Source: Phaeosaccion multiseriatum (Eukaryota > Protista > Ochrophyta, other classes). Taken from it: DNA of 64,000 nt. The notes under the pieces are model-generated. The model did not search any database. It was not told the origin of the DNA and saw nothing but the letters and a program-made list of their open reading frames with translations. A program made the position numbers and the translations under genes. The stretch is from the NCBI GenBank assembly GCA_965112735.1, contig OZ218963.1:2604001-2668000 (forward strand). Reading direction: 5' to 3'. Below, piece by piece: positions 1 through 62,100 of this stretch (positions are counted from its first letter, which is position 1; each line of letters opens with the position of its first letter).

Positions 1-1
1 T

Positions 2-5053: not shown

Positions 5054-5091
5054 GGGAGCTGGCGGAAGAGGCGGGGGTGTAGTGAGGGGGA

Positions 5092-5286
5092 TGTTAGAAG
5101 TGGCCTAGTTGGGGTCCCTTGGGGACCCAATCAGGGGTGTAACGGCCGGAAAACGGGCCAACGAGACGGTAAATCAGTAATAAAGAAAGGAAGCGCAGCC
5201 TGCGTGTGGGCTGGCTTCCGGGTGCTTGCTTCAGCTTCTGCTCTGCTCTAGCTTGGCTTTGAGGCTAGCTGTCGGTAGTTTCGACA
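5092..5286 (+). repeat. Exo-Gypsy 3' LTR (195 bp), preceded by a purine-rich PPT
   Basis: TGTTAGAAGT...AGTTTCGACA follows GAGGGGGA. Near-identical copies at 12013-12207, 43586-43780, 45482-45676 and 47404-47598. Confidence 0.9.
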
Positions 5287-5424
5287 CAGACGTGCCCGCA
5301 GTTCGTGGACCCATGCCGAGGCAGACGAAAACGACCCGTCCTCCACTAGCGCCGGAAGCATCGCCTGTAGAGGCACCGGGGGGTGCCGACCGAACAAGGC
5401 GTAGAATGGCGCCATCCCCGTGCC
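5287..5424 (-). mobile_element. Inverted fragment of an Exo-Gypsy integrase region (probable target of the copy 1 insertion)
   Basis: Reverse complement of about 4056-4192. Confidence 0.8.
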
Positions 5425-11192: not shown

Positions 11193-12012
11193 TGTGCCCA
11201 CAAGCTCTACAAAGGGTTTAGAGAATACTCCACAGGCTTTGTGCCAATGTGTGAAGCCTCCTATTATAATCTTGTAGCCTGCTCGTCGAGCGAGGTACCT
11301 TGTTGAATAAAAGAAAAGAAAGTGGAAGTCCAAAGGACATTCCAGAAAAGGGGTCCTGACACCAATACTGACATAGCCCTATTTTAACCCCGGGCAAGTA
11401 TCAATATCGACCTAGACCCAGACAGCACACTGCCTCCAAGGCGAGCTCGGGAGGGACTACCCTCAAGACTAAGCTTTACGTACAGCATCCTCAATGTCGT
11501 GAACGCGCAGCTCTCTTGCGTACCTTCTTCGTCGGCGGTCCTGAGCCTCGAGACAGAAACTCCCGAGCTCGACTGACAAGCTCCTGGTCTGGGAAGTTCT
11601 TAAGAAAGGTCTCCAAAAGGACAGGCACATCAGCCGCAAGCGTACGGATGGGCTCCATGCTGTTCTCCTCCGGCTCAAAGCCAACCCACTGAACTTGGAC
11701 GAGAAAGTCGCCACCCTCATCCTCGACGAGGTCGACGAATCTCTCCACAGTCCACAAGGGAGTGTCGTACTGGATCTGGGCGAGTGCGTCAGTGCTGACA
11801 CCAACACTCGCATCACAATAGTAGCGTAGCCGTGAAGCATGATCAGTGAAGCGCCTCTTCTTGCCAATCAGCTCCTCCACTTCATATACCATGGGGCTCA
11901 CCTCACAGATCACTCTGTAGGGCCCACTCCACACTCCACGCAGCTTGCTATGGGCCGAAACGTTGGCCATATTGACAAAGACACCAGGAACGAAGACGCC
12001 AGTGTGACCAAG
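11193..12012 (-). mobile_element. 3' remnant of a clade 2 Gypsy: GPY and chromodomain ORF (11491-11970), PPT, and an LTR starting at 11429 (far end uncertain)
   Basis: WSGPYRV and QWVGF..NSMEP motifs; GGAGGCAG followed by TGTGC on the minus strand. Confidence 0.75.
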
Positions 12013-14073
12013 TGTCGAAACTACCGACAGCTAGCCTCAAAGCCAAGCTAGAGCAGAGCAGGAGCTGAAGCAAGCACCCGGAAGCCAGCCCACACGCAGG
12101 CTGCGCTTCCTTTCTTTTATTACTGATTTACCGTCTGTTGGCCCGTTTTCCGGCCGTTACACTACTGATTGGGTCCCCAAGGGACCCCAACTAGGCCACT
12201 TCTAACATCCCCCTCACTACACCCCCGCCTCTTCCGCCAGCTCCCTCAGAAGCCGAGATGCGAGCGATAGAATTGCGTCTCGTGCGCCAGCCCGCTGCCC
12301 CACTTCTCATGTTGCCGCAGACGGATCGTGCTTTCCCGTTTAGACCTATGCCCTCTTTTGAAATTCACTCCTGGATCAAGGGCAGTGTGCGGAAGGGCGT
12401 TCTCGAACGCCTCTATGGCCTTGGCGTGTCCCCGCTCCAGTAACCACTCAGCCCATTCCCAGGTCTGGAAAGTGCCGCCGTCCGACACGGCCCACCGCAC
12501 GTTATACTCTCGCCGCAGTGGCAGCCCCGTGGCTTTGCGCCAGCGGAACTTCACAATCCTCGCCAGCGTGGGCACTTTCCCCTCACTCACCTCGTCCAGC
12601 TCTAAGCTACGCTGCTCCTGCATTGCGCTGGTAGCCCACTGAGGAGAGCACCAACGGATATGATACCTGGCGAACCCTTCCGGGAGACCGAAGGGCCGCT
12701 CGCTCACCCCATCGATGAACGGCTTCGTCAAATCTCTGTGGTACGCCCGTTGCAGCTGCTCCACACCATTGCCGCGCACCCGTTTCATAGACAGATACAC
12801 TGCGCTGCGCTGCATGACCTGATAGTGCTCTTCACTCACCCGCCCATGCTGAGCACAGTAGGCCCCCAGAGATGGCCAAGGCAAGACTGTATAAGGACCA
12901 TCCCACGAGTGCTGCAGAGCCTTGAGTTGCGCTGACGGGGGCCCTTCGAGTTCTTCCCCTTCTTGCTGGGCGGCGGCACCAGGACGATACAACATCACCT
13001 TGGTTCCGGGTCGCAGGGGCGTCGGCCAACGGCGTGAGGCGTTCTTCAGCTGCAATCTCCCGTGGTAGTCGCAGCGCCTCCCATTTACCACCGCCGCAGC
13101 CGCAGCCAGACGTGCCCGCAGTTCGTGGACCCATGCCGAGGCAGACGAAAACGACCCGTCCTCCACTAGCGCCGGAAGCATCGCCTGTAGAGGCACCGGG
13201 GGGTGCCGACCGAACAAGGCGTAGAATGGCGCCATCCCCGTGCTCTCCTGCGAGCGGCAGTTGTACGCATAGGTGAGCCCGGCGACGTAATCTGGCCACT
13301 GCTGCATCTGTGACTCCACGGTCGTCGCCAACATGTCCTTGATCGTGGCCATGAAGCGCTCCACCTGCCCATTGGCCTGTTGGTGCATCGGCGTCGTGAA
13401 CACTTGCGACGCCGATAGAACCCGCATCACATCGCCCATGAGCGCACTGGTGAACTGCGAGCCTTGATCACTCACCAGCACTCGGGGCACACCCAGGGTG
13501 GTGACGACATGCCGCACGAAGGCCCGAGCAATACCTTCCGCCGTATAGTCCTGTGCCCTCAAAGGCACCACCACTGTCCACTTCGTGAACCAATCCTGAA
13601 ACACCAAGAGGTACTCCTCACCGCCCATGCCCATAGGAAAGGGGCCAGCCACATCAGCGCCCATGACCGCCCAAGGTCCATCCACCTTGGAAATGGACGA
13701 CAGCGGCACAGGCTTTGGCTGCCGGCGAGGAGTCTTGCGTGTCTGGCACGCCAGACAGGAGCGGGCCCAATACAGCGCATGTGCATTCATCTTCTCCCAC
13801 CATACGCGCTCTTGCAGCGCGTCTAGCATACGTCCCGGGCCTTGGTGCCCACCTGCGATGGCATCGGTGTGGGCGGCATGCAGCAAGGCTGGCCGCATCT
13901 CCTTGGGCACACATACTTGTAGCCGAGTGTGCCGCACCCGCCACCGAAAGCCCCCAGGAGCCCACTTACGCATCAAGAGCCCGTCCTCATCCACAAAGAA
14001 CTCACCCCCACCTGCATCCACCACGCCGCCGGTGGGCCCAACCTGAACACGGCGACGGAGTGCTTCCAGCTCC

Positions 14074-15137
14074 TGTTAGAAGTCGTACTTTTGCTAGACT
14101 GATACCTGCCCTCTGAATTCAGACCGGGAGGTATCAGTCTAGCAAAAGTACGACTTCTAACAAGACCGTTGCTAGAAGACGAACCCCCCCCCCCACCGCA
14201 CGTAGTGGAGAGAAGTAACTCGCAGTCTGAGAATCAGCATCATGGGCCAGCAAGCTGGTAACAGTTTTCGCCGAAAAATACGCTTTTCAGAGGGCAGGTA
14301 TCAGTCTAGCAAAAGTACGACTTCTAACAAGGCTAGTTGTGAGTTCGAACCTTAGCTGTCGCTTGTGAAAAAGCGTATTTTTCGGCGAAAACTGTTACCA
14401 GCTTGCTGGCCCATGATGCTGATTCTCAGACTGCGAGTTACTTCTCTCCACTATGTGCGGTGGGGGGGGGGGGGTCGTCTTCTAGCAACGGTCTTGTTAG
14501 AAGTCGTACTTTTGCTAGACTGACACCTCCCGGTCTGAATTCAGAGGGCAGGTATCACTCGCTAGTTGTGAGTTCGAACCCTAGCTGTCGCTTGTGAAAA
14601 AGCGTATTTTTCGGCGAAAACTGTTACCAGCTTGCTGGCCCATGATGCTGATTCTCAGACTGCGAGTTACTTCTCTCCACTATGTGCGGTGGGGGGGGGT
14701 GTTACGACGCGTTTGGATAATACTGAAGGCATATTGGGATGCCTTATATCGTAACAAAAGAGGGGTTCGAGTCCTACCTGAGGAAAGAGAAAAAAAAAAT
14801 AATATGATGTTTCCCGAGGGGGGTTCCCAAGGAGATACCAGAGGGTCGTACCCTGTTGAAAAAAGCACGTGAAAACTGGTGGGATAAACAAAGGGACAGT
14901 ATTTAGGGACGAACGTGTCGGTAGCGCCAACCCCCCGGTGCGAAGGTGTAGGGCTCAAGGAACCCACCTAGGCGTTTGGATAATACTGAAGGCATATTGG
15001 GATGCCTTATATCGTAACAGGGGGGGGTTCGTCTTCTAGCAACGGTCTTGTTAGAAGTCGTACTTTTGCTAGACTGATACCTCCCGGTCTGAATTCAGAG
15101 GGCAGGTATCAGTCTAGCAAAAGTACGACTTCTAACA
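14074..15137. mobile_element. Hairpin-terminal mini-element family A, head-to-head composite, TSD CTCC
   Basis: 89-bp palindromic TG..CA repeat at both ends in inverted orientation. CTCC at 14070-14073 and 15138-15141; the empty site is visible near 52089. Confidence 0.9.
14700..15019 (+). mobile_element. TRIM-like mini-element family D (57-bp repeat TGTTACGA..TCGTAACA), nested in the G-run of element A
   Basis: Direct repeats 14700-14756 and 14972-15019. B-box GGTTCGAGTCC at 14764-14774. Flanked by G runs (GGGG TSD compatible). Confidence 0.75.
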
Positions 15138-18100
15138 CTCCGCATCAGCCCGCTGCGCACGCACCCACCACGCGGCCTCGACATGCAGACTGCCACCCAA
15201 AGCTCCAGCCGCTCGTCTGTGCGCCGCGGCAGCAGGCACCGTGCCTGGTAGAGACCACCCAAACTGTCGCTCTGCCTCTCGTCGATGCCCATCAAGCTCG
15301 CGCTGCAAGGTGGACTCCTGCTCCACCGGCTCCTTGGAAACTGAATCCACTGCATCCTCAGCTTCATTATCCACTGCATCCGCAGCTTCATTACCTGCAT
15401 CCCCCGCTTCTTCCGTGACCAGTAGATCTGCCGTACCAGGCTCCGACGGCGACTCCGCAGCAGGCGGCTCCCCAGGGGGGGTGATGCGGCCCTCCTCCGT
15501 AACAAGCTCCTCACCCTCGGTGGCACCAGCAACGGCAGCTGGACACACCTCCGCGGGCAGACGAGACGCATCCTCCTCAAGCTCGGCCTCCCATGCAGCC
15601 CACGCATGAGCGGCCGCGGCACCCGTTTGCTGAGCCTCCGCTGGTGTGCACATCGAGAAGTAGTCACGCGACACCTGACGGACTTGCTTCCATGGCAACT
15701 CGATCATGGTATCTAGGTGACTGGCCAACGCGCCCACCACCTTCCGCTGGCGCTTATATGTCCGCGTGAACCGCTCCACCATCTGCATCATTGTCTCCCA
15801 CGAGCACTGCAGTTTGAATTGCAGTTTGGCCAGGTCGAATACCTCCAACGTCTTGGAGTGGACACCAAAGATGTAGAGCGGTGATACGTGGTCGCGATCG
15901 CCCCAATAACCAACCGCGGCCTGCATGAACCTGCCGACTTGCATCTCCTCCTGCTCCGCAGGGGTGTGAGCAGGGCTCATCGCGCTAAGCTCCACCCCCG
16001 GGCCACCATAAACGAACGGCACACACTCCGCCATGCGAGGCCAGAGGCGGAGGAGCGCCGCAGCGTCAGCAAACGCGTACTCCCGTTGAGCGGCGGACAG
16101 CGGCCGCTTCGTCCAGTCGGTGGCCCGCTCCTCCTTGCTAAGGTGTTGCTCCAAAAACATGCTGACAAGGTCCTGGAGTCCGATGAACTGAGTATGTTCG
16201 GGGCACACGCGCTTAAAGAGGTCACTGGTGTCCACCAAGTTGACGATGTGCTGGACATGCTCCGCGAGCTCCGGCCATCGGCCCAGGGCACGTTGGTCGT
16301 GACTCCAGTGGTGAGCCAGCTTCACAATCGAGGGTTCGGCCCACAGGTCCCGCAACGCTTGCGCCAGTACCATCATACCCCCCGCCTTCTGAAGCGCGTC
16401 TAGATCAATCAAGAGCCCATAGTCACGCGCCACATCCGGCAGCGGCCCAACCTGCACGGCCAATTGCAGCAGCGACGCGCGCCGTCGGTGACGCGCCCAC
16501 TCCGAATCCATAGCGACCACTTTGGCTGTGCGCAACTGAGTCGATAGAGCCTGCAAGTGCCTCGGCGTAGACACGTACGTGCACCTCGCTGCGGAAATGT
16601 GGCTCACAAATGGCGACATCTGACCCCGCTGCCAGGCGTCTATCACCGCCTTCTTCACACCCAGCTGAGGTGCTCGCGTAGGCTGCCATCCACATTGCTG
16701 GAGACGCTGTGTCCAAGCACGCCGAGCAGTACCCCTGCGTGACTGCGTCGCCGCCAAGTCCACCTCTGCAGTCTGCCAGGCTTGTAGGGCCTCCGCTCCG
16801 CTCTGCTGCTGGTGGTGGCACCGTTGCTGCTGTTGCTGGGCCGTCACGGCAGGCACAGGAATAGGAAGGCGTGTGTCGGCTTCGCCCTGCAGCTGTTGCG
16901 CCACTGCGAGAAAGCGAAGCAGTGCGCCCTCCGTGGGCTCCTCCCAATGAAGGCTGCACTCGTCCCCTACCATCTCCACCAGGTTCAACTGCACCCCCAT
17001 CGAAGCACACCAGGTGTGCAAGGGCGACGGCCACTCGCACGCAACCATGGCCAAGTCTACCCCCGCATGCGTCTCCCACTCCTGCACCGGAAGCGCGTTG
17101 CGAGAGAGGCAGTCAGGCACCACCATTTGCTTCCCGGGACGATGCACAAACTGCAAGTGGTGCGTAGAGAGCCGCTCGTACCATCTGAACAGCTTGGAAT
17201 TGGTATCCTTGTGCCCAGCCAACCACAACAAGGGCTGATGGTCCGTCACCACTGTGGTGGGGTAGTGGCAGATGTACATGGCCAGTTTACGCACACACCA
17301 CACCACTGCCAGCAGCTCTAGCTCCGTGCTGCTCAGTCGCGCCTCCGTCTCCGTGGTAGCCCGACTGATGAACGTCACCACACGCTCCTCCCCGGTCGCA
17401 TCGTTCTGAGAGAGCACTCCTGCTAACCCTTCCGTCGAGGCATCGGTGCTCAGGGTGAAAGTCGTCGCTGGCCCGTACTCCGGAAAAGCCAGTGCAGGGA
17501 AAGACAACAAGTCGGCAACGAGTCCATCCCAAGCTGCATCGTGCGAGGCATTCCAGGCGCGGTGCTCACGTCGACGCCCTTACGCAGCAGCCCATTGAGA
17601 GGCCGCACTTTGCGCGCAAACTCCGGAATGAAACGGCGAAAGTAGCTGAGCATGCCAATGAAACGCCGCACCTGCTTAACTCGATTGACGCCGCCATCCT
17701 TCGCAAGCAACCTCAACGGCTTGACCAGCTCTTGCACCGCCGCATGCTTGGCCGGGTCTGTGCGCACCCCATTCTGATCCAGCAAATGCCCGCAGAACCG
17801 CACCTCCGGTGCACCCAATACAGCCTTACTCGGCTCCAACTTGAGCTTGTGCTCCACCAACCGCGCAAGCACAGCATCCAAATGCTCCAGATGCTGCTCA
17901 ACCGTAGCCGAAAACACAGCAATATCGTCCACAAAGCATGCCACATGCTCCTGAAGCCCCTTGAGCACCTTATTCATAAGCCGCACAAAGACTGCAGGCG
18001 CATTCTTCGCGCCCTGCGGCATCACTCGCCAAGCGTAAGTACCACTGTGGCACACAAAGGTGGATATGTCCTCTTCCGCTGCTGATGCCATCGGCACATT

Positions 18101-23586: not shown

Positions 23587-23967
23587 GTTGCTCTCTTCTC
23601 TCTCGCTGCTGCGAAGCCTCCGCTGATATCTCCCGCAGATTGCTCCGCTGCTGCGAAAACTTCACACTCACGCCTTGTAAAATGCGAGAACTAGTTCTGT
23701 GCTAAAGCTACGAACAGTACAGACCGCTCAGGGGTTTGGGCTAATATATGCCGCGTCTGTTGCGACGTCGGTGCCCGTATTGATAGTCTCTTTACTGCCC
23801 GCTGCTTCAAGCGTGGTCTCTTGTCTTGTACTTGGCAGTCTACAGGTCCCTTCGTTGCCACCTGGCACTTTCGGGACTCTCAGGTACGTTGAGGCGGGAA
23901 CTCTCTTTAGGACCGTTCTTATTTCTATAACCCCAGAACGTCCACCCGGAAACCCCAGGCGAGATGG

Positions 23968-26632: not shown

Positions 26633-26929
26633 TGTAAGAAGGCATCCTTTTGCTAGGCTGGCAGCTATCCACTGAATATTCACGGGGGTAGCTGCCAACC
26701 TAGCAAAAGGATGCCTTCTTACATGTCTGTCAGTTAAGGTCGATCCTCCCCCCCCCTCCGAAAACTCCTCCGAAAACCTTGGGGGGGTAACTACCTAGGA
26801 TTTCTCCCACACCGAGCCCGTGAATTTCAGTGTCATGCCCACCTTTCGCCCTCGGAAATTTTCTCACCATCCTCAGAATCGAACCCCGTCTGGGCATGTA
26901 AGAAGGCATGCTTTTGCTAGGCTGGCAGC
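26633..26929. mobile_element. Hairpin mini-element family B, right hairpin truncated, at a deletion junction in Exo-Gypsy copy 2
   Basis: 91-bp palindrome TGTAAGAAGG..CCTTCTTACA at 26633-26723, followed by the internal region and a partial arm. Confidence 0.85.
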
Positions 26930-27617: not shown

Positions 27618-28149
27618 TGTTAGAAGTCGTGCTTTTGCTAGACTGGTACCTCCCGGTCTGAATTCAGAGGGTAGGTGTAAGAAGGCATCCTTTTGCTAGG
27701 CTGGCAGCTACCCCCGTGAATATTCAGTGGATAGCTGCCAGCCTAGCAAAAGGATGCCTTCTTACATGTCTGTCAGTTAAGGTCGATCCTTCCCCCCCCT
27801 CCGAAAACTCCTCCGAACACCTTGGGGGGGTTACTACCTAGGATTTCTCCCACACCGAGCCCGTGCATTTCAGTGTCATGCCCAACTTTCGCCCTCGGAA
27901 ATTTTCTCACCATCCACAGAATCGAACCCCGTCTGGGCATGTAAGAAGGCATCATTTTGCTAGGCTGGCAGCTATCCACTGAATATTCACGGGGGTAGCT
28001 GCCAGCCTAGCAAAAGGATGCCTTCTTACATAGGTACCAGTCTAGCAAAAGCACGACTTCTAACATAATATTCAGTGGATAGCTGCCAGCCTAGCAAAAG
28101 GATGCCTTCTTACATAGGTACCAGTCTAGCAAAAGCACGACTTCTAACA
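27618..28149. mobile_element. Family A hairpin containing a complete family B element (27676-28030, TSD TAGG), followed by a partial duplication (28067-28149)
   Basis: TAGG on both sides of B; the A arms can be rejoined across it. Confidence 0.88.
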
Positions 28150-28822: not shown

Positions 28823-29111
28823 TGTAAGAAGGCTTCCTTTTGCTAGGCTGGCAGCTATCCACTGAATATTCACGGGGGTAGCTGCCAGCCTAGCAAAAGG
28901 ATGCTTTCTTACATGCCCAGACGGGGTTCGATTCTGAGGATGGTGAGAAAATTTCCGAGGGCGAAGGTTGGCCATGACACTGAAATTCGAGGTAACGGGC
29001 TCGGTGTGGGAGAAATCCTAGGTAGTTACCCCCCCCCCCCCCAAGGTTTTCGGAGGAGTTTTCGGAGGGGGGGGAAGGATCGACCTTAACTGACAGGCAT
29101 GTAAGAAGGCT
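28823..29111 (+). mobile_element. Family B element with 3' hairpin truncated
   Basis: Hairpin 28823-28913, then TGCCCAGACGGGGTTCGATTC and the internal region. Confidence 0.85.
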
Positions 29112-35354: not shown

Positions 35355-36194
35355 CACTCCGTTTGCGTAAAAATCGCCCAAATTTATAGAAAAACAGTTT
35401 TCGCGCATTTGCAGAGAAATGACGCTGGGAGAAGCGCTATAGCTGTTCGTGTAGCTCTTTGAGATGCCTACCGATACATAGTCTTTCGGCTTTCAACGCC
35501 TCTTCCCTTCCGTAGTTGTCAGCATTTCCGCAGCAGCACCCCCTGTTGCCTTCAGATAGGCTACGCAATACTAATCTAAGTGGGTAGTGTAGCCTATCTG
35601 AAGGCAACAAAGATTTCTCCCACTCTCGGGTTCGATTCTCATCTGAGCTCTCTGCTACTATTTTCCTGTGGACTTGAGGTACCCATAGGACTTCCATATA
35701 TTTTCCTGTGGACTTGGTGTACCCATAGGACTTCTACATCTTCTTGGATGGGTATCGATACCCTTGAATGGGCGATATTTTTGTTGCCTTCAGATAGGCT
35801 ACACCCCTTCCCGCGGGGGGGGGGACGGGGGATGTGCACGTCACGGAAATCGCACCAGGCTTGCCAAGGGTCCTGCTGCTGCTCCACTGTGGCTAGCTGC
35901 CTTAGCGCTGCGCCTGTTCTCTTGCAGAAGGGCGGGCAAGCTGCCCATGAGCGATTTCCGTGGCGTGCACATCCCCCTTCTCCCCCCCGCGGGAAGGGGG
36001 TGCTGCTGCGGAAATGCTGACAACTACGGAAGGGAAGAGGCGATGAAAGCCGAAAGACTATGTATCGGTAGGCATCTCAAAGAGCTACACGAAGAGCTAT
36101 AGCGCTTCTCCCAGCGTCATTTCTCTGCAAATGCGCGAAAACTGTTTTTCGCCGGAAATCGGGCGATTTGGGCGATTTTTACGCAAACGGAGTG
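35355..36194. mobile_element. piggyBac-type MITE / foldback element with long TIRs of about 200 bp, TTAA target
   Basis: TTAA|CACTCCGTTTGCG ... CGCAAACGGAGTG|TTAA. The arms are reverse complements and there is no coding content. Confidence 0.8.
35544..35803 (+). mobile_element. Hairpin mini-element family C, TSD CCCC, inserted in the MITE arm
   Basis: 66-bp palindrome 35544-35609, GGGTTCGATTC at 35628-35638, and a terminal single arm 35782-35803. The empty site is visible in the opposite MITE arm. Confidence 0.8.
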
Positions 36195-36268: not shown

Positions 36269-36357
36269 TGTTAGAAGTCGTGCTTTTGCTAGACTGGTAC
36301 CTACCCTCTGAATTCAGACCGGGAGGTACCAGTCTAGCAAAAGTACGACTTCTAACA
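36269..36357. repeat. Family A hairpin (solo)
   Basis: 89-bp palindrome. Confidence 0.85.
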
Positions 36358-36519
36358 AGCTGTTGGAAGGCCCCGGGATAGGCATTGGGGATGTTGGAAG
36401 GCCTCAGATGAGATGGGCCATAAGTCAAAGGCCCAGGCCCAGGCAGATGCGGTGAGAACGGGTGGCGTGGCTCTCACTATCCTATGTGCGAAGGTGGTCG
36501 TTTAGGACTAGCATGCAAT

Positions 36520-39126: not shown

Positions 39127-39227
39127 CAATAAGTAAATAGTGGCAAGGCTGGCTGCTAGGCTGGCTTTGGGGTTGCTGTTACCTTGTCCGTGTGTCTAGT
39201 TCTATCCTATCTGTAGGCGACAGCGCA

Positions 39228-43585: not shown

Positions 43586-45676
43586 TGTCGAAACTACCGA
43601 CAGCTAGCCTCAAAGCCAAGCTAGAGCAGAGCAGAAGCTGAAGCAAGCACCCGGAAGCCAGCCCACACGCAGGCTGCGCTTCCCTTCTTTTATTACTGAT
43701 TTACCGTCTGTTGGCCCGTTTTCCGGCCGTTACACTACTGATTGGGTCCCCAAGGGACCCCAACTAGGCCACTTCTAACATCCCCCTCACTACACCCCCG
43801 CCTCTTCAGCCAGCTCCCTCAGAAGCCGAGATGCGAGCGATAGAATTGCGTCTCGTGCGCCAGCCCGCTGCCCCACTTCTCATGTTGCCGCAGACGGATC
43901 GTGCTTTCCCGTTTAGACCTATGCCCTCTTTTGACATTCACTCCTGGATCAAGGGCAGTGTGCGGAAGGGCGTTCTCGAACGCCTCTATGGCCTTGGCGT
44001 GTCCCCGCTCCAGTAACCACTCAGCCCATTCCCAGGTCTGGAAAGTGCCGCCGTCCGACACGGCCCACCGCACGTTTTACTCTCGCCGCAGTGGCAGCCC
44101 CGTGGCTTTGCGCCAGCGGAACTTCACAATCCTCGCCAGCGTGGGCACTTTCCCCTCACTCACCTCGTCCAGCTCTAAGCTACGCTGCTCCTGCATTGCG
44201 CTGGTAGCCCACTGAGGAGAGCACCAACGGATATGATACCTGGCGAACCCTTCCGGGAGACCGAAGGGCCGCTCGCTCACCCCATCGATGAACGGCTTCG
44301 TCAAGTCTCTGTGGTACGCCCGTTTGTTAGAAGTCGTACTTTTGCTAGACTAATACCTGCCCTCTGAATTCAGACCGGGAGGTATCAGTCTAGCAAAAGT
44401 ACGACTTCTAACAAGACCGTTGCTAGAATACGAACCCCCCCCCCCCACCGCACATAGTGAAGAGAAGTAACTCGCAGTCTGAGAATCAGCATCATGGGCC
44501 AGCAAGCTGGTAACAGTTTTCGCCGAAAAATACGCTTTTTCACAAGCGACAGCTAAGGTTCGAACTCACAACTAGCCTTGTTAGAAGTCGTACTTTTGCT
44601 AGACTGATACCTGCCCTCTGAATAATTTTATATTTTATATTCAGAGGGCAGGTATCAGTCTAGCAAAAGTACGACTTCTAACAAGGCTAGTTGTGAGTTC
44701 GAACCTTAGCTGTCGCTTGTGAAAAAGCGTATTTTTCGGCGAAAACTGTTACCAGCTTGCTGGCCCATGATGCTGATTCTCAGACTGCGAGTTACTTCTC
44801 TTCACTATGTGCGGTGGGGGGGGGGGGTTCGTCTTCTAGCAACGGTCTTGTTAGAAGTCGTACTTTTGCTAGACTGATACCTCCCGGTCTGAATTCAGAG
44901 GGCAGGTATCAGTCTAGCAAAAATACGACTTCTAACAAACGGGCGTACCACAGAGACTTGACGAAGCCGTTCATCGATGGGGTGAGCGAGCGGCCCTTCG
45001 GTCTCCCGGAAGGGTTCGCCAGGTATCATATCCGTTGGTGCTCTCCTCAGTGGGCTACCAGCGCAATGCAGGAGCAGCGTAGCTTAGAGCTGGACGAGGT
45101 GAGTGAGGGGAAAGTGCCCACGCTGGCGAGGATTGTGAAGTTCCGCTGGCGCAAAGCCACGGGGCTGCCACTGCGGCGAGAGTATAACGTGCGGTGGGCG
45201 GTGGCGGACGGCGGCACTTTCCAGACCTGGGAATGGGCTGAGTGGTGGCTGGAGCGGGGACACGCCAAGGCCATAGAGGCGTTCGAGAAAGCCCTTCCGC
45301 ACACTGCCCTTGATCCAGGAGTGAATGTCAAAAGAGGGCATATGTCTAAACGGGAAAGCACGATCCGTCTGCGGCAACATGAGAAGTGGGGCAGCGGGCT
45401 GGCGCACGAGACGCAATTCTATCGCTCGCATCTCGGCTTCTGAGGGAGCTGGCGGAAGAGGCGGGGGTGTAGTGAGGGGGGTGTTAGAAGTGGCCTAGTT
45501 GGGGTCCCTTGGGGACCCAATCAGTAGTGTAACGGCCGGAAAACGGGCCAACGAGACGGTACATCAGTAATAAAGAAAGGAAGCGCAGCCTGCGTGTGGG
45601 CTGGCTTCCGGGTGCTTGCTTCAGTTTCTGCTCTGCTCTAGCTTGGCTTTGAGGCTAGCTGTCGGTAGTTTCGACA
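43586..45676. repeat. 2.09-kb palindrome: Exo-Gypsy LTR, pol 3' end and family A element, mirrored about 44625-44637
   Basis: The left half is the reverse complement of the right half with scattered substitutions. Confidence 0.92.
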
Positions 45677-46552
45677 GTAGTGCGGGTGAATGGTGTTCTC
45701 AGTGGTCTTGGTTCCACTACCGAAGTTGGTGCGCGGCCAAAGAGGAGGGGGCGGCGGTCGAAGAAGCGCAAGGTAAGGCCCGACGGGGTCAGTGATCCGG
45801 CAGAGCGGCAGCTGGAGGAGGAGCGGCAGTTGCAGCAGGAGATTGACGCGATGAAGTGTGATCCGGCAAGGCAGCGCCGGTGGCAGCAGGAGTTTAAAGC
45901 GGATCCTCCGGACTGGTGGGACGGGCCTTCTCTCTCTCTGAAGGATCGGCTGCAGCAATTGGAAACGGAGCAGGCCGCGCATGGAGTGCCTCGTACGGTT
46001 GCAACGCTGGGACAGCAGCTGACGGTGGGGACGAGCCAGCGCTAGCGCAGTCGTGCACAGCCACGGAGGGTGAGTTTAAGGCCTTGGGCTTTCTCACCCT
46101 GCCGTGGCTGGCAGGTGTGTGGAAGGGTGACCTGTCGAGTGCCACGTCACACACTGGTGGGTGAGTTTTACTTTTTTCCCAGTTTTTGGTTACAGTCGAG
46201 CTTCAGTAGGTGAAAACGCTTGAGTTGCGTGGGGACACGCAACATGTTAGAAGTCGTGCTTTTGCTAGACTGGTACCTACCCTCTGAATATTCAGACCGG
46301 GAGGTACCAGTCTAGCAAAAGCACGACTTCTAACAAACAGTCTTGTCAGGGGAGTGTTAGAAGTGCAGGGATGGCTGACGGGGATGTGGAAAGTCAGTCG
46401 TATGTCAGTGGCCCAGGCCTAGGCAACGCAGTGAGAAACGGGGCCCGTTTCTCACTATCCTCCTGTAGGTGGTCGTTTAGGACAGTGCATAGATAAGCTA
46501 ATAGATACAAGGCCGGCTGTCAGGCCAGCTTTGGGGTGCTGCTACCTTATCC
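45677..46552 (+). pseudogene. Diverged 3' fragment of the gag-like element with a partial LTR
   Basis: Homologous to about 38240-39080. Confidence 0.85.
46245..46335. mobile_element. Solo family A hairpin with TSD AACA
   Basis: 91-bp palindrome (centre GAATATTC). Empty site near 38864. Confidence 0.9.
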
Positions 46553-46943
46553 CGTCTGAATTCAGAGGGTAGGTACCAGTCTAGCAAAAGTACGACTTCT
46601 AACAAGGTAATTGCGAGTTCGAACCCTGGCTGTCGCTTGTGAAAAAAACGTATTTTTCGGCGAAAACTGGTACCGGCTTGCTGGCTTGCTGACCCATTAG
46701 TCTGATACCCAGACTGCGAGTTACTTCTCTCCACTATGTGCGGTGGGGGGGGGTTCGTCTTCTAGCAATGGGCTTGTTAGAAGTCGTACTTTTGCTAGAC
46801 TGGTACCTACCCTCCCGGTCTGAATTCAGAGGGTAGGTACCAGTCTAGCCAAAAGTACGACTTCTAACATTTTCCTAGACTGGTACCTCCCGGTCTGAAT
46901 GCAGAGGGTAGGTACCAGTCTAGCAAAAGTACGACTTCTAACA
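46553..46943 (+). mobile_element. Family A subfamily copy with a tandem partial hairpin
   Basis: Half hairpin, variant internal region (AGGTAATTGCGAGTTCGAACCC), then two hairpins. Confidence 0.82.
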
Positions 46944-48655: not shown

Positions 48656-51279
48656 TGTGGAAAGTCGTGCTTAGACCTCCACGAAACGGACTAGACACAC
48701 AGATAAGGTAGCAGCACCCCAAAGCTAGCCTGACAGCCGGCCTTGTATCTATTAGCTTATCTATGCACTGTCCTAAACGACCACCTACAGGAGGATAGTG
48801 AGAAACGGGCACCGTTTCTCACTGCGTTGCCTAGGCCTGGGCCACTGACATACGACTGACTTTCCACATCCCCGTCAGCCATCCCTGCACTTCTAACACT
48901 CCCCTGACAAGATTGTTGCGTGTCCCCACGCAACTCAAGCGTTTTCACCTACTGAAGCTCGACTGTAGCAAACCCCTTTATGCTGCTTCCAAAAAAACCG
49001 GATGAGAAATATGCAAAACTCACCCACCAGTGTGTGACGTGGCACTCCACAGGTCACCCTGCCACACACCTGCCACGGCAGGGTGAGAAAGCCCAAGGCC
49101 TCAAACTCACCCTCCGTGGCTGCGCACGGCTGCGCTAGCGCTGGCTCGTCCCCACGTCACCTGCTGTCCCAGCGTTGCAACCGTACGAGGCACTCCATGC
49201 GCGGCCTGCTCCGTCGCCAGCAGCTGGGCCGCCTTCTCGTCCATCAGCTTCTGCAGCCGCGCCTGCGCCGCTTCCACTTGCTGCATCCGATCCTTCAGAG
49301 AGAGAGGAGGCCGGTCCAACCAGGCCGGACGATCCGCTGCAATCTCCTGCTGCCACCGGCGCTGCCTTGCCGGATCACACTTCCTCGCGTCCATCTCCTG
49401 CTGCCACTGGCGCTCCTCCTCAAGCTGCCGCTCTGCCGGATCCCTGACCCCGTCGGGCCTTACCTTGCGCTTCTTCGACCGCCGCCCCCTCCTCTTTGGC
49501 CGCGCACCAACTTCGGTAGTGGAACCAAGACCACTGAGAACACCATTCACCCGCACTACAGGCTGAGCCACAGCCCGCAGTGCGTCCTCCCGCTCTTGCC
49601 AGTCCCGCACTTGCTGTACCCGCGTGCTCTCCGCTTGAGCCTGCGTGTGTACCTCTTGCAGCTTGCGCTGAGCTTCCTCAGCCAAGGCAGCTTGTTGCGC
49701 CTGCTGCCGTCTCTCTTTCTCCCCGACGCGGCGCCTCTCCACCCGCTCCTGAGCCGCACACACACGCGCCCGCTCCAACTGTTCCTCCTCCAGCCAAACA
49801 GACTCGCGCTCCTGCCGCTCCCGCTCGAGGACCGCAGCAGACACTGACCCCTCTGCAAGCGTGACGCCAGCCTGCTCTACCTGCTCCTCCTGAGCCTGCG
49901 CTTGCGCCACCCGAAGCCGAGACTGCGCCGCGGCCGCCACCGTCAGCTCTAGCGTCTGCAACTCCTTCGAGGCTCTGCGCTGTGCTGCCTGCCCTGTCGT
50001 CGTCACGGCCTTCACCAGCTGAGCAAGGACGCGCTTGTATTGCTCAGTGCGCTGCACAAGCGTCACCACCACCTGGGAAGCTGTACCCAAGCCGTACCGC
50101 TTCCCTGCATCCACCATCTTCCTCACCATGGCTCCGGTGGTCGGTTCGGTAGGGCAGCGAGAGAGACAGTGCTCCTTCTTGCAGTGAAAGCACGAAAAGA
50201 CTTGCCCTGCCCCACAGTCGACCTTAGATCGTTTCTGCTTGCTGCCCGACCCCACCTGTGCAGCAGCTACCTGCACCTCCGACTGCTGCCTTGGATCCCG
50301 ACCCAATAGCTGGCCCAGTAGCACCGGAAGTGCTGCAAGGTCCATCCTGATTCCATGCAGCTCCTCCATCAACCGATTGACCATGTCGTGATCCCCCATC
50401 GGTTCCTCCTGGGACCAGCCAGTACGCTTACTCTGTGCCAGCCGATCGCCGCGCTATGCCGGCATCTTCCCTCTTGCTGCGCCCCTGCAGCTGCTCCCTC
50501 CGAGCGTGCCTAATTATGCCTGATATCCGTGCCTGCTGCTGCTGCTGCTGCCTCTGCAGCTGCTGCGGTATCCAACACCTGCTGCTGCGCCCCCTGCCTC
50601 TCCAGCCAAGCCTGCTGTATCTCCTGCCGCTAACCTCTAAATCAGCGGTCCCCTCTGATTAAGTATAGCGGATACCCGTGCCTCCTGCTGCTGCCCCTGC
50701 AGCTGCTGTATCCAATCCTTTGCTGCTGCCCCTGCAGCTGCTCGCCAATCCTTCCGTGCCTCCTGCTGCTGCCCCTGCAGCTGCTCCTTGCAATATCCCT
50801 AGCTACCTCTTGCTGCCGATCCACGGTAGCGCTGCTGTGCCACTCTTTCAAAGCCAACCAATAAATTCTCCCACAAATAAATTCTCCCACCGGTTCCCAA
50901 GCAAAGCTAATTAAGCTAAACGCCCCGGACGGAGCAAGCTGTGGCGTGTCCGTGCCTTGGACACTAACCAAAAACGTCCACGTGCTAGTCTAGCGCACGA
51001 TGAACTCAAAGCCTCCCTCTGCTGAGCCTATTGGCCAAGTGCCAAACTGTCTTCGAGCTTTGGGGTTGTGGAAAGTCGTGCTTAGACCTCCACGAAACGG
51101 ACTAGACACACAGATAAGGTAGCAGCACCCCAAAGCTAGCCTGACAGCCGGCCTTGTATCTATTAGCTTATCTATGCACTGTCCTAAACGACCACCTACA
51201 GGAGGATAGTGAGAAACGGGCACCGTTTCTCACTGCGTTGCCTAGGCCTGGGCCACTGACATACGACTGACTTTCCACA
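48656..51279 (-). mobile_element. Second gag-like non-autonomous element, TSD TTGT, inserted in the Exo-Gypsy integrase
   Basis: LTRs 48656-48868 and 51067-51279; ORF 49107-50399. Confidence 0.93.
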
Positions 51280-56771: not shown

Positions 56772-57390
56772 TGTTAGAAGTCGTACTTTTGCTAGACTGA
56801 TACCTCCCGGTCTGAATGACTTCTAACAAGGCTAGTTGTGAGTTCGAACCTTAGCTGTCGCTTGTGAAAAAGCGTATTTTTCGGCGAAAACTGTTACCAG
56901 TGTGGGGCCGGTACCTCCCTCGATTATGAGGAGGAAGGCACCCCCAAGCTGAGCGCTCCGTTCCGGGCCCAAAAGGGGAGAGATAAGAGTCCAATGCTGG
57001 CACCAAGTGTATTAATGACTATGGCTATCCCACCCTAAGACCCTGGACAGCTCCCTTGTTTAAGGAAGCAATCCAATTGGTCTTTACGGGTTCAGGAGTG
57101 CGGAGGGGCCAACCAGGCCCCAAAAGGCCGCGTCCCCACATCATTGACTTACTGTCCTGCCTACCTAATAATACGTAATTGGGCCTAACCCAGCTCCACC
57201 ACACCAGCTTGCTGGCCCATGATGCTGATTCTCAGACTGCGAGTTACTTCTCTCCACTATGTGCGGTGGGGGGGGGGGGGTTCGTCCTCTAGCAACGGTC
57301 TTGTTAGAAGTCGTACTTTTGCTAGACTGATACCTCCCGGTCTGAATTCAGAGGGCAGGTATCAGTCTAGCAAAAGTACGACTTCTAACA
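56772..57390 (+). mobile_element. Family A monomer (5' hairpin internally deleted), TSD TGAC
   Basis: TGAC at 56768-56771 and 57391-57394. The empty site is in copy 2 near 19843. Confidence 0.9.
56901..57203. repeat. 303-bp solo-LTR-like insertion, TSD CCAG, inside element A
   Basis: TGTGG..CCACA ends; removing it restores the A internal sequence. Confidence 0.8.
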
Positions 57391-59116: not shown

Positions 59117-62100
59117 TGTGCTAAGCTGAGATAGTAGAAACGTTAAGGGGTTTGGACTAAGTATATGCTGCGCCTATTGTAAGAAGGCATCCTTTTGCTA
59201 GGCTGGCAGCTATCCACTGAATATTCACGGGGGTAGCTGCCAGCCTAGCAAAAGGATGCCTTCTTACATGCCTGTCAGTTAAGGTCGATCCTTCCCCCCC
59301 CTTCGAAAACTCCTCCGAAAACCTTGGGGGGGTAACTACCTAGGACTTCTCCCACACCGAGCCCGTTACCTCGAATTTCAGTGTCATGCCCAACTTTCGC
59401 CCTCGGAAATTTTCTCACCATCCTCAGAATCGAACCCCGTCTGGGCATGTAAGAAAGCATCCTTTTGCTAGGCTGGCAGCTATCCACTGAATATTCACGG
59501 GGGTAGCTGCCAGCCTAGCAAAAGGATGTCTTCTTACATGCCCAGACGGGGTTCGATTCTGTGGATGGTGAGAAAATTTCCGAGGGCGAAAGGTGGGCAT
59601 GACACTGAAATTCGAGGTAACGGGCTCGGTGTGGGAGAAATCCTAGGTAGTTACCCCCCCAAGGTTTTATGTAAGAAGGCATCCTTTTGCTAGGCTGGCA
59701 GCTATCCATTGAATATTCACGGGGGTAGCTGCCAGCCTAGCAAAAGGATGCCTTCTTACATGCCTGTCAGTTAAGGTCGATCCTTCCCCCCCCTCCGAAA
59801 ACTCCTCCGAAAACCTTGGGGGGGCAACCACCTAGGATTTCTCCCACACCGAGCCCGTTACCTCGAATTTCAGTGTCATGCCCACCTTTCGCCCTCGGAA
59901 ATTTTCTCACCATCCACAGAATCGAACCCCGTCTGGGCATGTAAGAAGACATCCTTTTGCTAGGCTGGCAGCTATCCACTGAATATTCACGGGGGTAGCT
60001 GCCAGCCTAGCAAAAGGATGCCTTCTTACATGCCCAGACGGGGTTCGATTCTGTGGACGGTGAGAAATTTCCGAGGGCGAAAGTTGGGCATGACACTGAA
60101 ATTCACGGGCTCGGTGTGGGAGAAATCCTAGGTAGTTACCCCCCCAAGGTTTTCGGAGGAGTTTTCGGAGGGGGGGGAAGGATCGACCTTAACTGACAGG
60201 CATGTAAGAAGGCATCCTTTTGCTAGGCTGGCAGCTACCCCCGTGAATATTCAGTGGATAGCTGCCAGCCTAGCAAAAGGATGCCTTCTTACACTATGGT
60301 GGGGCGTCAGTGTCCGTATTGATAATATATCTCTACTACTTGCTGATGCAAAGCTTGTGCCCACAAAGAGGAGGGTGAAACGCCAGAGCCGTTGATCCCC
60401 CTCGGGGCGTGCCTAGGAAACCGACATTCTTATTATACCCCAGAATGTGTGACCGGAAACCCTCAGGCAGGACAATCTACCACACTACCCCCAAGCGACA
60501 GTTCGAGCCGACTGGGAAGTAAGTGTGTCTATCTAGTTTGTGTCCGCTTTCGTGTGCGCGCGGAGCGCGGCGGCTTAGTGGCCGATCGCGTCGTAGTCTT
60601 GCGCAGATAGGCTCGGACTGCGCTGATCAACTGCTTGTCCTGATGGTGCTGCAGGTAGGTCTCCAGTAAACGTGGAGTATCTTCGTGCAGCGCCTCGATG
60701 GGCTCCTCGCTATTCTCGAGGGCGTCAAAGCCACGCCACTTAACAATGACGTGCCATGAATCATCTGCGTGCTTAACGAGGCCTTCAAAGGCCTCCACCA
60801 CAAAGTCTTGGGTGTTATACGAAATCTGTTGAAGTACGTCGGTAGTGACGTTAACGTGAGCACCGCAGTAGTAGCGGAGCCGGCTGATGTGTACCTCATA
60901 GGTACGCTTCTTGCCCACAAGCTCCTCCACCTTGTACACGTGTTGCTCAAGGGCTTCAAGCACTCGGCAGGGCCCATGCCACTTGCCTAGTATCTTGCTT
61001 GTAGGCCCTACTGTTGCAACGAGTACGTAGACTCCGACCTGAAACAGCGTCTCGCTGTTGAGCTGCTTAGCTCTGGCCAAGTCCTGACGATGCTCTGCAC
61101 CACGTCTGCCACTCATCAACCTCTGGTTGATGCCATCGCGCTTGTGATCGCGGAGGGTAGTCAGTTGGCGCGCCGCCTCGGCACGCTGCCCCTCCTTCCT
61201 CTGATGGAGTTGTGTCGCAAGGGTGTCTCTCTGCGCCGGGGTCAGCTGCAGTAGCCGAACCTTTTGCATCCGATCCGCGTCGTGGATCAAAATCGTGTCG
61301 AGAGGCCGCTGTGGTACGTGACCACTGTGCAGCTGGATGGGAGACAAGTTAGACCGACTGCTCTTGTTGGAGCTGTTCTCAACAGCCTCCATCACTGGCA
61401 GTAGCTGCGGCCATGTCTCGGGCGGCTGCCGTAGTTCAGACATCATTGATTTCATGATCTTCTGCAGTGTCTGTACACCACGCTCGCCCAATCCTCGACT
61501 GTATGGGTTGTGTGCCACCACAAAGTGGTGGTTGCACCGCAAGAGCTGACTTAACTCACGTATCACCTCATTTAGGAAATGACTGCCTCGGTCACTCTGC
61601 CACCTGGGCACTACGCCATGCTGTGCGAACCAGCGCAACAGATCGCGTGCACACACTCGTGCAGTAGCTTCCAAACATGGCTCATACATTGACAATGATG
61701 AAAAATCATCAAAGATGCACAGCACTTGCTTGACCTGAAGCTTCATGAACCCTTCTGGGGACTCTGCCCATATGACTCCATCGCCAATCTTGACGAAGTC
61801 AAACCAGATGAGTTGCTGGGGTCCAGTGGCGTGCCATTGAGCTAGCAGGGGGCGAGGCACTCTCTCGCCCTTGCCGTTGGTGAGGCAGTGGAGACAGTTC
61901 TGAACGAGGCTGCGCACGTCCTTGTCTAGCGACTGCCAGATGAACTTCTCCTTAAGAGCACTCAGGGTGTTTGTCTCTCCCTGATGGCCCATCATACCCT
62001 GATGGCCAGTCACACACAGCCTCAGGTGCATGTCTTCCGCCTTGGCTCCCACCGAGGGAATTCAAATGCGGGTGCTGTCAGCGGGGTTGCTCGTCGGATG

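What the first reader, a model, noticed from the sequence alone, without database searches (positions are those of the whole stretch)
14329..14774. Four distinct mini-element families all place a Pol III B-box just downstream of the 5' terminal repeat
Seen: A has GAGTTCGAACC about 12 nt after the hairpin; B has GGTTCGATTC about 11 nt after (e.g. near 28925); C has GGGTTCGATTC at 35628 with an A-box-like TAGTGTAGC about 43 nt upstream inside the hairpin; D has GGTTCGAGTCC at 14764. Their internal sequences otherwise show no obvious similarity. Known: GTTCRANNC is the TFIIIC B-box, and Cassandra TRIMs use a 5S-type Pol III promoter. Inference: these are SINE/TRIM hybrids transcribed by Pol III from within the terminal repeat. 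Internal T4-T5 runs may yield short RNAs that act as primers.
Basis: partly seen in the sequence, partly recalled or inferred. Interest (0 to 1): 0.75.

Follow-up and report, generated by a model that had tools for sequence, protein, structure and literature searches.

The report
Hairpin-ended mini-transposons sharing a B-box motif
Four families of tiny non-coding mobile elements with hairpin-shaped ends all carry, just inside one end, the same short sequence that matches the tRNA-gene promoter box read by RNA polymerase III; the motif is real and non-random, but its use as a promoter is only a plausible, untested reading.

Summary
GTTCGA is the only 5- or 6-mer shared by the four internal domains. 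It lies 8-20 nt inside one terminal repeat and always points inward (0 of 20,000 shuffles). All nine GGTTCGANNC hits in the 64 kb lie in these elements.

The elements are 260-360 bp and non-coding. They are integrase-type insertions with TGT...ACA ends and 4-bp target duplications, nested in Ty3/gypsy elements. Their terminal repeats are 57-91-nt palindromes, partly homologous to LTR ends.

The SINE/TRIM Pol III reading is partly supported.
- For: all four fit GTTCGANNC exactly, on one side only. In A, B and C the spacing puts a tRNA-type start near the palindrome centre. The repeats are too short to hold a conventional promoter.
- Against: no A-box above chance and no tRNA, 5S or SINE match or fold. 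T4-T5 runs lie inside the elements. Each family has a degenerate inverted copy at the other end. There is no canonical PBS or PPT, so they fail TRIM and Cassandra membership. The short-RNA-primer idea found no complementarity.

Rivals are a sub-terminal binding site of a DNA-level foldback or MITE-like element, or a module shared with the resident chromovirus. More copies could not be fetched.

The parts
14074..15137 (+). Family A composite (1064 bp) inserted as one unit into a Ty3/gypsy element. Layout: hairpin, partial inverted A, half hairpin, A1, truncated hairpin, A2 (interrupted by D), hairpin.
   Evidence: TGTTAG...CTAACA ends and TSD CTCC. The empty site is seen in another copy of the host element at 3226-3229.
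14330..14494 (+). A1 internal domain. B-box-like GAGTTCGAACC at 14341-14351, T5 run at 14378-14382, G13 run near the 3' end.
14559..14699 (+). A2 internal domain (motif at 14570-14580). The hairpin upstream of it is truncated, and the domain is cut in its G-run by D.
14700..15019 (+). Family D element. The 5' repeat 14700-14756 is a weak hairpin (TGTTACGA...TCGTAACA). GGTTCGAGTCC is at 14764-14774. The 48-nt direct repeat recurs at 14972-15019.
   Evidence: It sits inside A's G-run, so the GGGG duplication is ambiguous.
15049..15137 (+). Type-1 palindromic terminal repeat (89 nt) of family A.
   Evidence: DNA fold -42.1 kcal/mol, z = -16.8
44325..44937 (+). Head-to-head A dimer: hairpin, A(-), symmetrised central hairpin, A(+), hairpin. 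Motifs at 44557-44565 (-) and 44697-44705 (+).
   Evidence: It is the centre of a 2.1-kb palindrome.
46551..46943 (+). Diverged A variant (internal 46605-46774, motif 46617-46625) with rearranged hairpins.
56772..57390 (+). A monomer with TSD TGAC (motif at 56842-56850). Its 5' hairpin is internally deleted and its internal domain is split by a 303-bp solo LTR at 56901-57203 (TSD CCAG).
28823..29110 (+). Family B copy: 91-nt hairpin 28823-28913, internal 28914-29089 with GGTTCGATTC at 28925-28934, then a truncated 3' hairpin.
59178..60293 (+). B array of five hairpins and four internal domains in orientation - + - +. It was inserted as one unit into a chromovirus 3' LTR.
   Evidence: TSD CTAT. 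Motifs at 59427(-), 59550(+), 59919(-) and 60042(+). Hairpin loops occur in both orientations.
27676..28030 (-). B monomer inserted into a type-1b hairpin (TSD TAGG). Motif at 27919-27928 on the minus strand.
26633..26929 (-). B copy with a truncated second hairpin. Motif at 26876-26885 on the minus strand.
35544..35803 (+). Family C element: 66-nt hairpin 35544-35609, GGGTTCGATTC at 35628-35638, inverted degenerate copy GGGTATCGATACCC near 35746-35759. The 3' repeat is reduced to the left arm, 35782-35803.
   Evidence: TSD CCCC, with the empty site in the other arm of the host palindrome.
46245..46335 (.). Solo type-1b hairpin with TSD AACA, inserted in a gag-only LTR element.
36269..36357 (.). 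Solo type-1b hairpin with no detectable TSD.
48656..51279 (-). 2.6-kb gag-only LTR element 'G' (second copy 36516-39129). It has ~213-bp LTRs reading TGTGGAAAGTC...GACTTTCCACA, TSD TTGT on the + strand and a PPT-like GACGGGGA. Its LTR ends resemble the family-A hairpin arms.
60481..60528 (-). 3' untranslated end of a chromovirus with PPT GCTTGGGGGTAG. On the + strand, GTTCGAGCC (60501-60509) lies 16 nt inside the LTR boundary, which is the same geometry as in the mini-elements.

Best explanation
A, B, C and D are non-coding, non-autonomous mobile elements that a retroviral-type (DDE) integrase inserts. Their terminal repeats have shrunk to short palindromes built from LTR-end sequences.

Each family keeps a tRNA-gene-type B-box (GTTCGANNC) 8-20 nt inside one repeat, pointing inward. 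I take this as a TFIIIC binding site that acts as an internal Pol III promoter element.

The 57-91-nt repeats have no room for a conventional U3 promoter. An internal promoter is therefore the simplest way for the element to be transcribed from a start inside its own repeat. In A, B and C that start would fall near the centre of the palindrome, 54-58 nt upstream of the motif. The RNA, or a DNA copy of it, would then be handled by the reverse transcriptase and integrase of resident Ty3/gypsy elements.

Shown: the elements, their ends and target duplications, the LTR-end homology, the motif, its exclusivity, its orientation and its spacing.

Inferred: TFIIIC binding, Pol III transcription, the start site, and every step from RNA to inserted DNA.
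For: - Motif statistics.
- Pattern fit: all four families fit GTTCGANNC, while the inverted copies at the other end never do.
- Shared module: B, C and D share a wider homologous module around the motif although their hairpins are unrelated. This argues for selection on it.
- Within-family conservation: the motif is invariant in 7 B and 6 A copies, with variable sites directly beside it in A.
- Compensating spacing: a long repeat goes with a short spacer (A 89+13, B 91+12) and a short repeat with a long spacer (C 66+20). The palindrome centre therefore lies 58, 58 and 54 nt from the motif. By established knowledge that is about the usual start-to-G53 distance of tRNA genes.
- Weak upstream feature: a TRGC-like string lies 35-40 nt upstream in every family.
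- Possible terminators: a T4 in the left arm of the A and B repeats and a T5 at the C 3' junction.
- Integrase-type insertion: 4-bp TSDs and TGT...ACA ends like the resident gypsy-type element G.
- Origin of the hairpins: an arm is homologous to the G LTR end.
Against: - No A-box beats random windows.
- No tRNA-like gene or fold was found.
- A has a T5 38 nt after the motif, and B and C have T4 runs inside, so full-length Pol III RNA is doubtful.
- D's spacing does not fit: about 30-37 nt from repeat centre to motif.
- The motif region is mirrored at the other end.
- A B-box-like string also sits, antisense, next to the PPT of an autonomous chromovirus.
- No PBS or PPT is present to complete a retroviral-type cycle (against 56, 63, 64).
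- Only one window and 1-7 near-identical copies per family were available, with no expression data.
Confidence: 0.4

Rival explanations
1. DNA-level reading. The elements are foldback or MITE-like cut-and-paste (or copy-in) transposons moved by an integrase-like transposase. The motif is a sub-terminal protein-binding site that belongs to long imperfect inverted ends, and its likeness to a B-box is coincidental or historical.
For: - Sub-terminal inverted repeats include the motif at matched offsets: C p<0.002, D p=0.012, and B and A concordant in position only.
- No PBS or PPT is present in either orientation.
- TGTNR ends and 4-bp TSDs are those of Ginger1 as well as of gypsy (PMC2836005).
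- Dimers and arrays move as single units.
- In three of the four TSD-flanked units the outer repeat loops are inverted relative to each other, like TIRs.
Against: - No integrase-only transposase gene is seen. Every integrase domain in the window lies beside RT or chromo parts of gypsy elements.
- The TSDs are not the CCGG-type targets of Ginger1.
- The terminal sequences differ among families while the sub-terminal motif is kept, which is the reverse of what a shared transposase usually gives.
- An arbitrary binding site would match seven fixed B-box positions in four families only by a very unlikely accident.
- Only one end keeps the exact form.
Confidence: 0.25
2. Reversed-orientation retroelement reading. 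The reader's '5' end' is really the 3' end. The motif, read as GG(A)CTCGAAC-like, is a cis element lying just upstream of the 3' repeat. It is inherited from, and recognised by, the chromovirus-type partner that mobilises the mini-elements.
For: - The chromovirus at 60481 onward has GGCTCGAAC 16 nt from its 3' LTR on its sense strand. A related 3.25-kb element has GACTCGGAC in the same place. A third chromovirus has GTCGAGC and CTCGAGA before its PPT. Element G has CTCGAAG 9 nt inside its LTR.
- By my rough estimate, the chance of GTTCGANNC falling in that 14-nt zone at one of about 12 LTR boundaries is about 1%.
- C read in reverse has a purine-rich stretch between the motif and the repeat.
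Against: - In reverse orientation A, B and D have no purine tract next to the repeat.
- The chromovirus relatives do not keep the exact motif (GTCCGAGTC, GCTCGCC).
- TCGA-type strings near 3 of 9 boundaries is only weakly above expectation.
- No role for such an element is known.
Confidence: 0.15
3. Relic reading. The module is a leftover piece of a tRNA gene's 3' half (T-arm plus following bases), captured once by an ancestor of all four families. It persists without present function.
For: - B, C and D align beyond the motif, including a following CTGAG(GA). This is compatible with a common origin.
- The motif is in tRNA sense.
Against: - Everything else, including the hairpins, has diverged beyond recognition, while seven motif positions are intact in four families. 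That implies constraint.
- T-stem pairing is not kept (and by reading).
- No tRNA model scores, even at E<=10.
Confidence: 0.12
4. Chance co-occurrence, picked out by eye.
Against: 0 of 20,000 shuffles give any shared 6-mer in the first 30 nt. Allowing the eight orientation choices still leaves p<0.001.
Confidence: 0.01

Closest known systems
Cassandra TRIMs of plants (PMC7215508)
   Same: Both are miniature non-coding terminal-repeat elements that carry a Pol III promoter-type sequence and form arrays in which neighbouring units share one repeat.
   Different: Cassandra has a 5S-derived type-1 promoter (box A and box C) inside a 240-350-bp LTR, a canonical PBS (TGGTATCAGAGC) and a PPT. Here the motif is a type-2 B-box lying outside the repeat. 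The repeats are 57-91-nt palindromes, no 5S match exists, PBS and PPT are absent, and array units alternate in orientation.
tRNA-derived SINEs
   Same: Both have an internal B-box near the 5' end of a short non-coding repeat, with T-runs downstream.
   Different: No A-box above chance and no tRNA-like fold are found here. Insertion is integrase-type (TG...CA ends, 4-bp TSD) rather than LINE-type, which gives variable long TSDs and a 3' tail.
Ginger1 DNA transposons and their non-autonomous copies (PMC2836005)
   Same: Both have TGTNR termini, inverted ends, 4-bp TSDs and an enzyme of the gypsy-integrase kind.
   Different: Ginger1 targets CCGG or CCGT. Here the TSDs are CTCC, TGAC, CTAT, CCCC, AACA and TAGG. 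No Ginger-type transposase is in the window, and each end is itself a full palindrome.
Parvovirus/AAV terminal hairpins (works-like only)
   Same: Both have palindromic ends whose asymmetric loop occurs in two orientations (family B), and both show head-to-head and tail-to-tail concatemers sharing one palindrome.
   Different: There is no Rep-type gene or nick site. Recombination between palindromic repeats could produce the same arrangements. Family A loops are not flipped.

Membership tests
TRIM (terminal-repeat retrotransposon in miniature) | Small size, no coding capacity, terminal direct repeats starting TG and ending CA | tested here: met
   Elements are 260-360 bp with repeats of 57-91 nt and TGT...ACA ends. 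The repeats are palindromes, which is atypical.
TRIM (terminal-repeat retrotransposon in miniature) | PBS complementary to a tRNA 3' end directly after the 5' repeat | tested here: not met
   No TGG-type PBS occurs in either orientation. The post-repeat sequence read as antisense tRNA does not form a T-arm or acceptor (by reading). The host tRNAs are unknown, so an unusual primer cannot be excluded.
TRIM (terminal-repeat retrotransposon in miniature) | Polypurine tract abutting the 3' repeat | tested here: not met
   The bases abutting the 3' repeat are not purine-rich in A, B, C or D. G-rich runs lie 8-25 nt away. Resident copia, chromovirus and G elements do have abutting PPTs.
TRIM (terminal-repeat retrotransposon in miniature) | Short target-site duplication (4-6 bp) | tested here: met
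   4-bp TSDs at six insertions, three of them with empty sites available.
Cassandra | 5S rRNA-derived domain with box A and box C inside each LTR | tested here: not met
   No 5S match in Rfam at gathering score or at E<=10.
Cassandra | Conserved PBS TGGTATCAGAGC | tested here: not met
   Absent from all element sequences read.
tRNA-derived SINE / type-2 Pol III gene | B-box GGTTCGANNCC | tested here: met
   11/11 in D, 10/11 in B and C, 9-10/11 in A.
tRNA-derived SINE / type-2 Pol III gene | A-box TRGCNNAGTGG 30-60 nt upstream of the B-box | tested here: not met
   The best matches have 2-3 mismatches, as in 14-57% of random 60-nt windows.
tRNA-derived SINE / type-2 Pol III gene | tRNA-related sequence or fold | tested here: not met
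   ARAGORN finds none. Rfam gives no tRNA or SINE hit at E<=10. Folds have z-scores near 0.
tRNA-derived SINE / type-2 Pol III gene | Pol III transcription and TFIIIC binding | not testable with these tools
   Needs RNA 5'-end mapping and ChIP.
Ginger1-type non-autonomous DNA transposon | TGTNR inverted termini and 4-bp TSD | tested here: met
Ginger1-type non-autonomous DNA transposon | CCGG/CCGT target preference | tested here: not met
   The TSDs are CTCC, TGAC, CTAT, CCCC, AACA and TAGG.
Ginger1-type non-autonomous DNA transposon | Autonomous partner encoding an integrase-like transposase without RT, with the same ends | tested here: inconclusive
   None is in the window. The rest of the genome could not be searched.

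The most novel reading that the evidence does not exclude
This would be an undescribed class of integrase-inserted mini-elements that need neither a PBS nor a PPT. Their palindromic terminal repeats would self-prime both DNA strands (snap-back or rolling-hairpin style). That would explain the shared single palindromes between inverted units and the flipped loops. The template RNA would come from an internal tRNA-type Pol III promoter kept just inside the repeat.
Probability: 0.12. Interest if true: 0.85.

Novelty: new variant of a known kind. Interest (0 to 1): 0.55.

Why it matters
If the motif is a working B-box, these elements would be a second, independent solution to a problem so far documented only for Cassandra: how an LTR-derived element too small for a Pol II promoter gets transcribed. 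They would use a tRNA-type promoter rather than a 5S-type one, placed outside the repeat. They would also show that an LTR can shrink to a palindrome of its two integrase-recognition ends and still move, as monomers, dimers and arrays. The lack of a PBS and PPT raises a concrete and testable question about how their DNA is made.

Tried and rejected
1. PBS reading of the motif. The motif is in tRNA sense. As antisense tRNA the post-repeat sequences give no T-stem or acceptor, and read-through copying of a primer tRNA would give the opposite strand. Rejected by reading.
2. tRNA-like, T-arm or dimerisation-hairpin structure. No shared or stable fold was found.
3. Hammerhead retrozyme or 5S. No Rfam match. 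Only generic microRNA-precursor hits to the hairpins appeared, as any long hairpin gives.
4. Short Pol III RNAs as primers. No complementarity to primer-binding positions.
5. Hairpins as independent elements that target sites upstream of a B-box. Flanks of solo hairpins and of composites lack the motif, and hairpin type tracks internal type. Rejected.
6. More copies from public data.
   - The viral and metagenome scans with a hairpin pattern gave only unrelated chance hits.
   - The gypsy Pol has no relative above 39% identity, so the source genome is not in the collections.
   - A literature search for the hairpin strings found nothing.
7. Within-family conservation test. Copies are too alike (about 95%) to separate the motif from its flanks.
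8. Other hairpin families without the motif. None exists in the window.

Full report
**Setting.** The window has about 58% G+C and is almost entirely nested transposable elements.
- Three copies of a large Ty3/gypsy-type element have the domain order RT, RNase H, 3'-5' exonuclease, integrase. They lie at 1-5287 (+), 12012-20712 (-) and 47404-59119 (-).
- The window also holds several chromoviruses, a copia-like element and a 2.6-kb gag-only LTR element I call G.
- One ORF fragment at 8781-9278 (-) matches a CDP-alcohol phosphatidyltransferase and looks like an exon of a host gene. I did not build or search a joined gene model.
- The sequence is not human-like.
- The best relatives of the gypsy Pol are 39% identical, so the source genome is not in the protein collection and the organism stays unidentified.

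**The observation.**
- GGTTCGANNC occurs nine times against 1.6 expected, and every hit lies in a mini-element.
- I took one representative internal domain per family. GTTCGA is the only 5- or 6-mer they share on one strand, starting at positions 14 (A), 13 (B), 21 (C) and 8 (D).
- Only 0.75% of shuffles share any 6-mer anywhere. None of 20,000 share one within the first 30 nt.
- All four fit the B-box core GTTCGANNC.
- No other short-loop hairpin family exists in the window, so there is no motif-free family hidden from view.

**What the elements are.** Every intact boundary reads TGT...ACA and is flanked by a 4-bp duplication.

| Insertion | TSD |
|---|---|
| A composite 14074-15137 | CTCC |
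| A monomer 56772-57390 | TGAC |
| B array 59178-60293 | CTAT |
| B monomer 27676-28030 | TAGG |
| C 35544-35803 | CCCC |
| Solo hairpin 46245-46335 | AACA |

- Empty sites are visible for three of these in other copies of the host sequence.
- The resident element G also makes 4-bp duplications, whereas the copia-like element makes 5 bp.
- The terminal repeats of A, B and C are near-perfect palindromes of 89, 91 and 66 nt. Their DNA folds are -42, -41 and -24 kcal/mol, with z-scores of -17 to -10. D's 57-nt repeat is only a weak hairpin.
- A type-1b hairpin arm shares an exact 11-mer with the end of the G LTR. Its centre resembles the start of a solo LTR. By eye, both G LTR ends resemble the hairpin ends.
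- I therefore read the hairpins as LTRs reduced to their two integrase-recognition ends.

**Arrays and orientation.** Units occur as monomers, as a head-to-head dimer and as an array of four units in orientation - + - +. Neighbouring units always share one hairpin, and these multimers have moved as single units.
- In family A the asymmetric hairpin loop always follows the orientation of the internal domain.
- In family B it occurs in both orientations.
- Recombination between palindromic repeats, or snap-back copying, could each give these patterns. I cannot tell which.

**What the motif is not.**
- ARAGORN finds no tRNA.
- Rfam finds nothing at gathering score. At E<=10 it reports only generic microRNA-precursor hits to the hairpins, with no tRNA, 5S, SINE or hammerhead.
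- The 60 nt after each repeat fold no better than shuffles and share no structure.
- No A-box match exceeds what random 60-nt windows give, although a TRGC-like string sits 35-40 nt upstream in each family.
- The motif is in tRNA sense, so it cannot be a PBS for a tRNA 3' end. Read as antisense, the sequences give no T-stem or acceptor.
- None of the four families has a purine tract abutting the 3' repeat. The copia-like element, three chromoviruses and G all have one.
- The elements therefore fail two defining features of TRIMs and the defining features of Cassandra (PMC7215508).

**Points in favour of a B-box function.**
- The exact pattern is kept on one side only. Each family has a degenerate inverted copy at the matching distance from the other repeat, and none of these fits the pattern. 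The alignment is significant for C (p<0.002) and D (p=0.012) and concordant only in position for A and B.
- B, C and D share a wider module around the motif although their hairpins are unrelated.
- Repeat length and spacer compensate. The palindrome centre lies 58, 58 and 54 nt from the motif in A, B and C. From general knowledge of tRNA genes, that is close to the usual distance from transcription start to G53. D does not fit (30-37 nt).
- The repeats are too short for a conventional promoter, so an internal one is a natural solution.
- A conserved site that matches seven fixed positions of one well-known box in four families is unlikely to be an arbitrary binding site.

**Points against.**
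- A has a T5 run 38 nt after the motif. B and C have T4 runs well before their 3' repeat. A Pol III transcript would probably be about 100 nt long and would not span the element.
- The mirrored architecture suits a DNA-level inverted-end element, whose TGTNR ends and 4-bp duplications are also those of Ginger1 (PMC2836005).
- An autonomous chromovirus carries GTTCGAGCC antisense, 16 nt inside its 3' LTR next to the PPT. Weaker TCGA-type strings sit at the same place in relatives. The module may therefore be a retroelement cis sequence read from the other strand.
- Within families the copies are about 95% alike, so the motif is invariant but so is most of its surroundings.

**Verdict.**
- The elements are a new variant of miniature integrase-dependent elements with palindromic repeats.
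- The Pol III promoter reading is the single most likely explanation (about 0.4) but rests on sequence geometry only.
- The 'TRIM' label and the primer idea are not supported.
- Attempts to fetch more copies failed. The decisive tests are a whole-genome copy census, RNA 5'-end mapping and TFIIIC/Pol III ChIP.

Noticed in passing
window 43585-45676: A 2.1-kb near-perfect palindrome (arms 915 nt at 99%) is centred in the loop of a family-A hairpin at about 44631. Both outer ends are the 3' terminus of the large gypsy element. The flanks on the two sides are unrelated and there is no TSD. It looks like a fold-back duplication seeded by the hairpin.
   Followed up: partly
window 2-5053 (+), 15132-17510 (-), 51168-56747 (-): The large Ty3/gypsy Pol carries a DNA_pol_A_exo1 (3'-5' exonuclease) domain between RNase H and integrase (E about 1e-20). 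A paper on bdelloid LTR elements with DEDD-type additions came up in a search (PMC5408684) but I did not read it.
   Followed up: partly
window 5275-5287, 12012-12024, 43585, 45676, 47404; 5' sides at 20712 and 59119: The large gypsy element ends in ...GGTAGTTTCGACA in five copies with different flanks. It has no recognisable 3' LTR there. Its last ~20 nt merely resemble the end of a 271-bp chromovirus-type LTR. Both available 5' sides abut the last base of such an LTR. This is unexplained.
   Followed up: partly
window 14757-14769 and 15020-15033: Both terminal repeats of D are followed by a G-run plus TTCG, so BLAST extends the direct repeat to 61 nt. D sits in A's G-run just before A's own GGGGTTCG. 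It could be coincidence, a target preference or a recombination trace.
   Followed up: no
window 24122-24133 and 23688-23697 (-): Perfect palindromes sit directly after the 5' LTRs of the copia-like element (CGACAATTGTCG) and of the 3.25-kb chromovirus derivative (GAACTAGTTC). No LTR element in the window has a TGG-type PBS.
   Followed up: no
window 51040-51057 (-) against 60481-60505: The leader just inside the 5' LTR of element G (ACCCCAAAGCTCGAAG) resembles the reverse complement of the chromovirus PPT flank. G therefore has PPT-like sequence abutting both LTRs in inverted orientation.
   Followed up: no
window 35400-36140: A larger palindromic (foldback or TIR-type) element with arms of about 145 nt plus inner arms hosts the C insertion. 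Its second arm supplied the empty site.
   Followed up: partly
window 29005-29017 against 35610-35623: B's internal domain contains GTGGGAGAAATC, the reverse complement of the first bases of C's internal domain (p=0.003). The families share rearranged pieces beyond the motif.
   Followed up: no
window 8781-9278 (-): An ORF fragment has a CDP-alcohol phosphatidyltransferase motif (E 9e-17). It is probably one exon of a host gene among the transposons. It was not modelled or joined.
   Followed up: no
window 40920-42100: A G+C-rich (68%) tract has a 9-nt periodic repeat in 58 overlapping copies. It lies inside a long ORF (40835-43624) that ends in a reverse-transcriptase domain.
   Followed up: no
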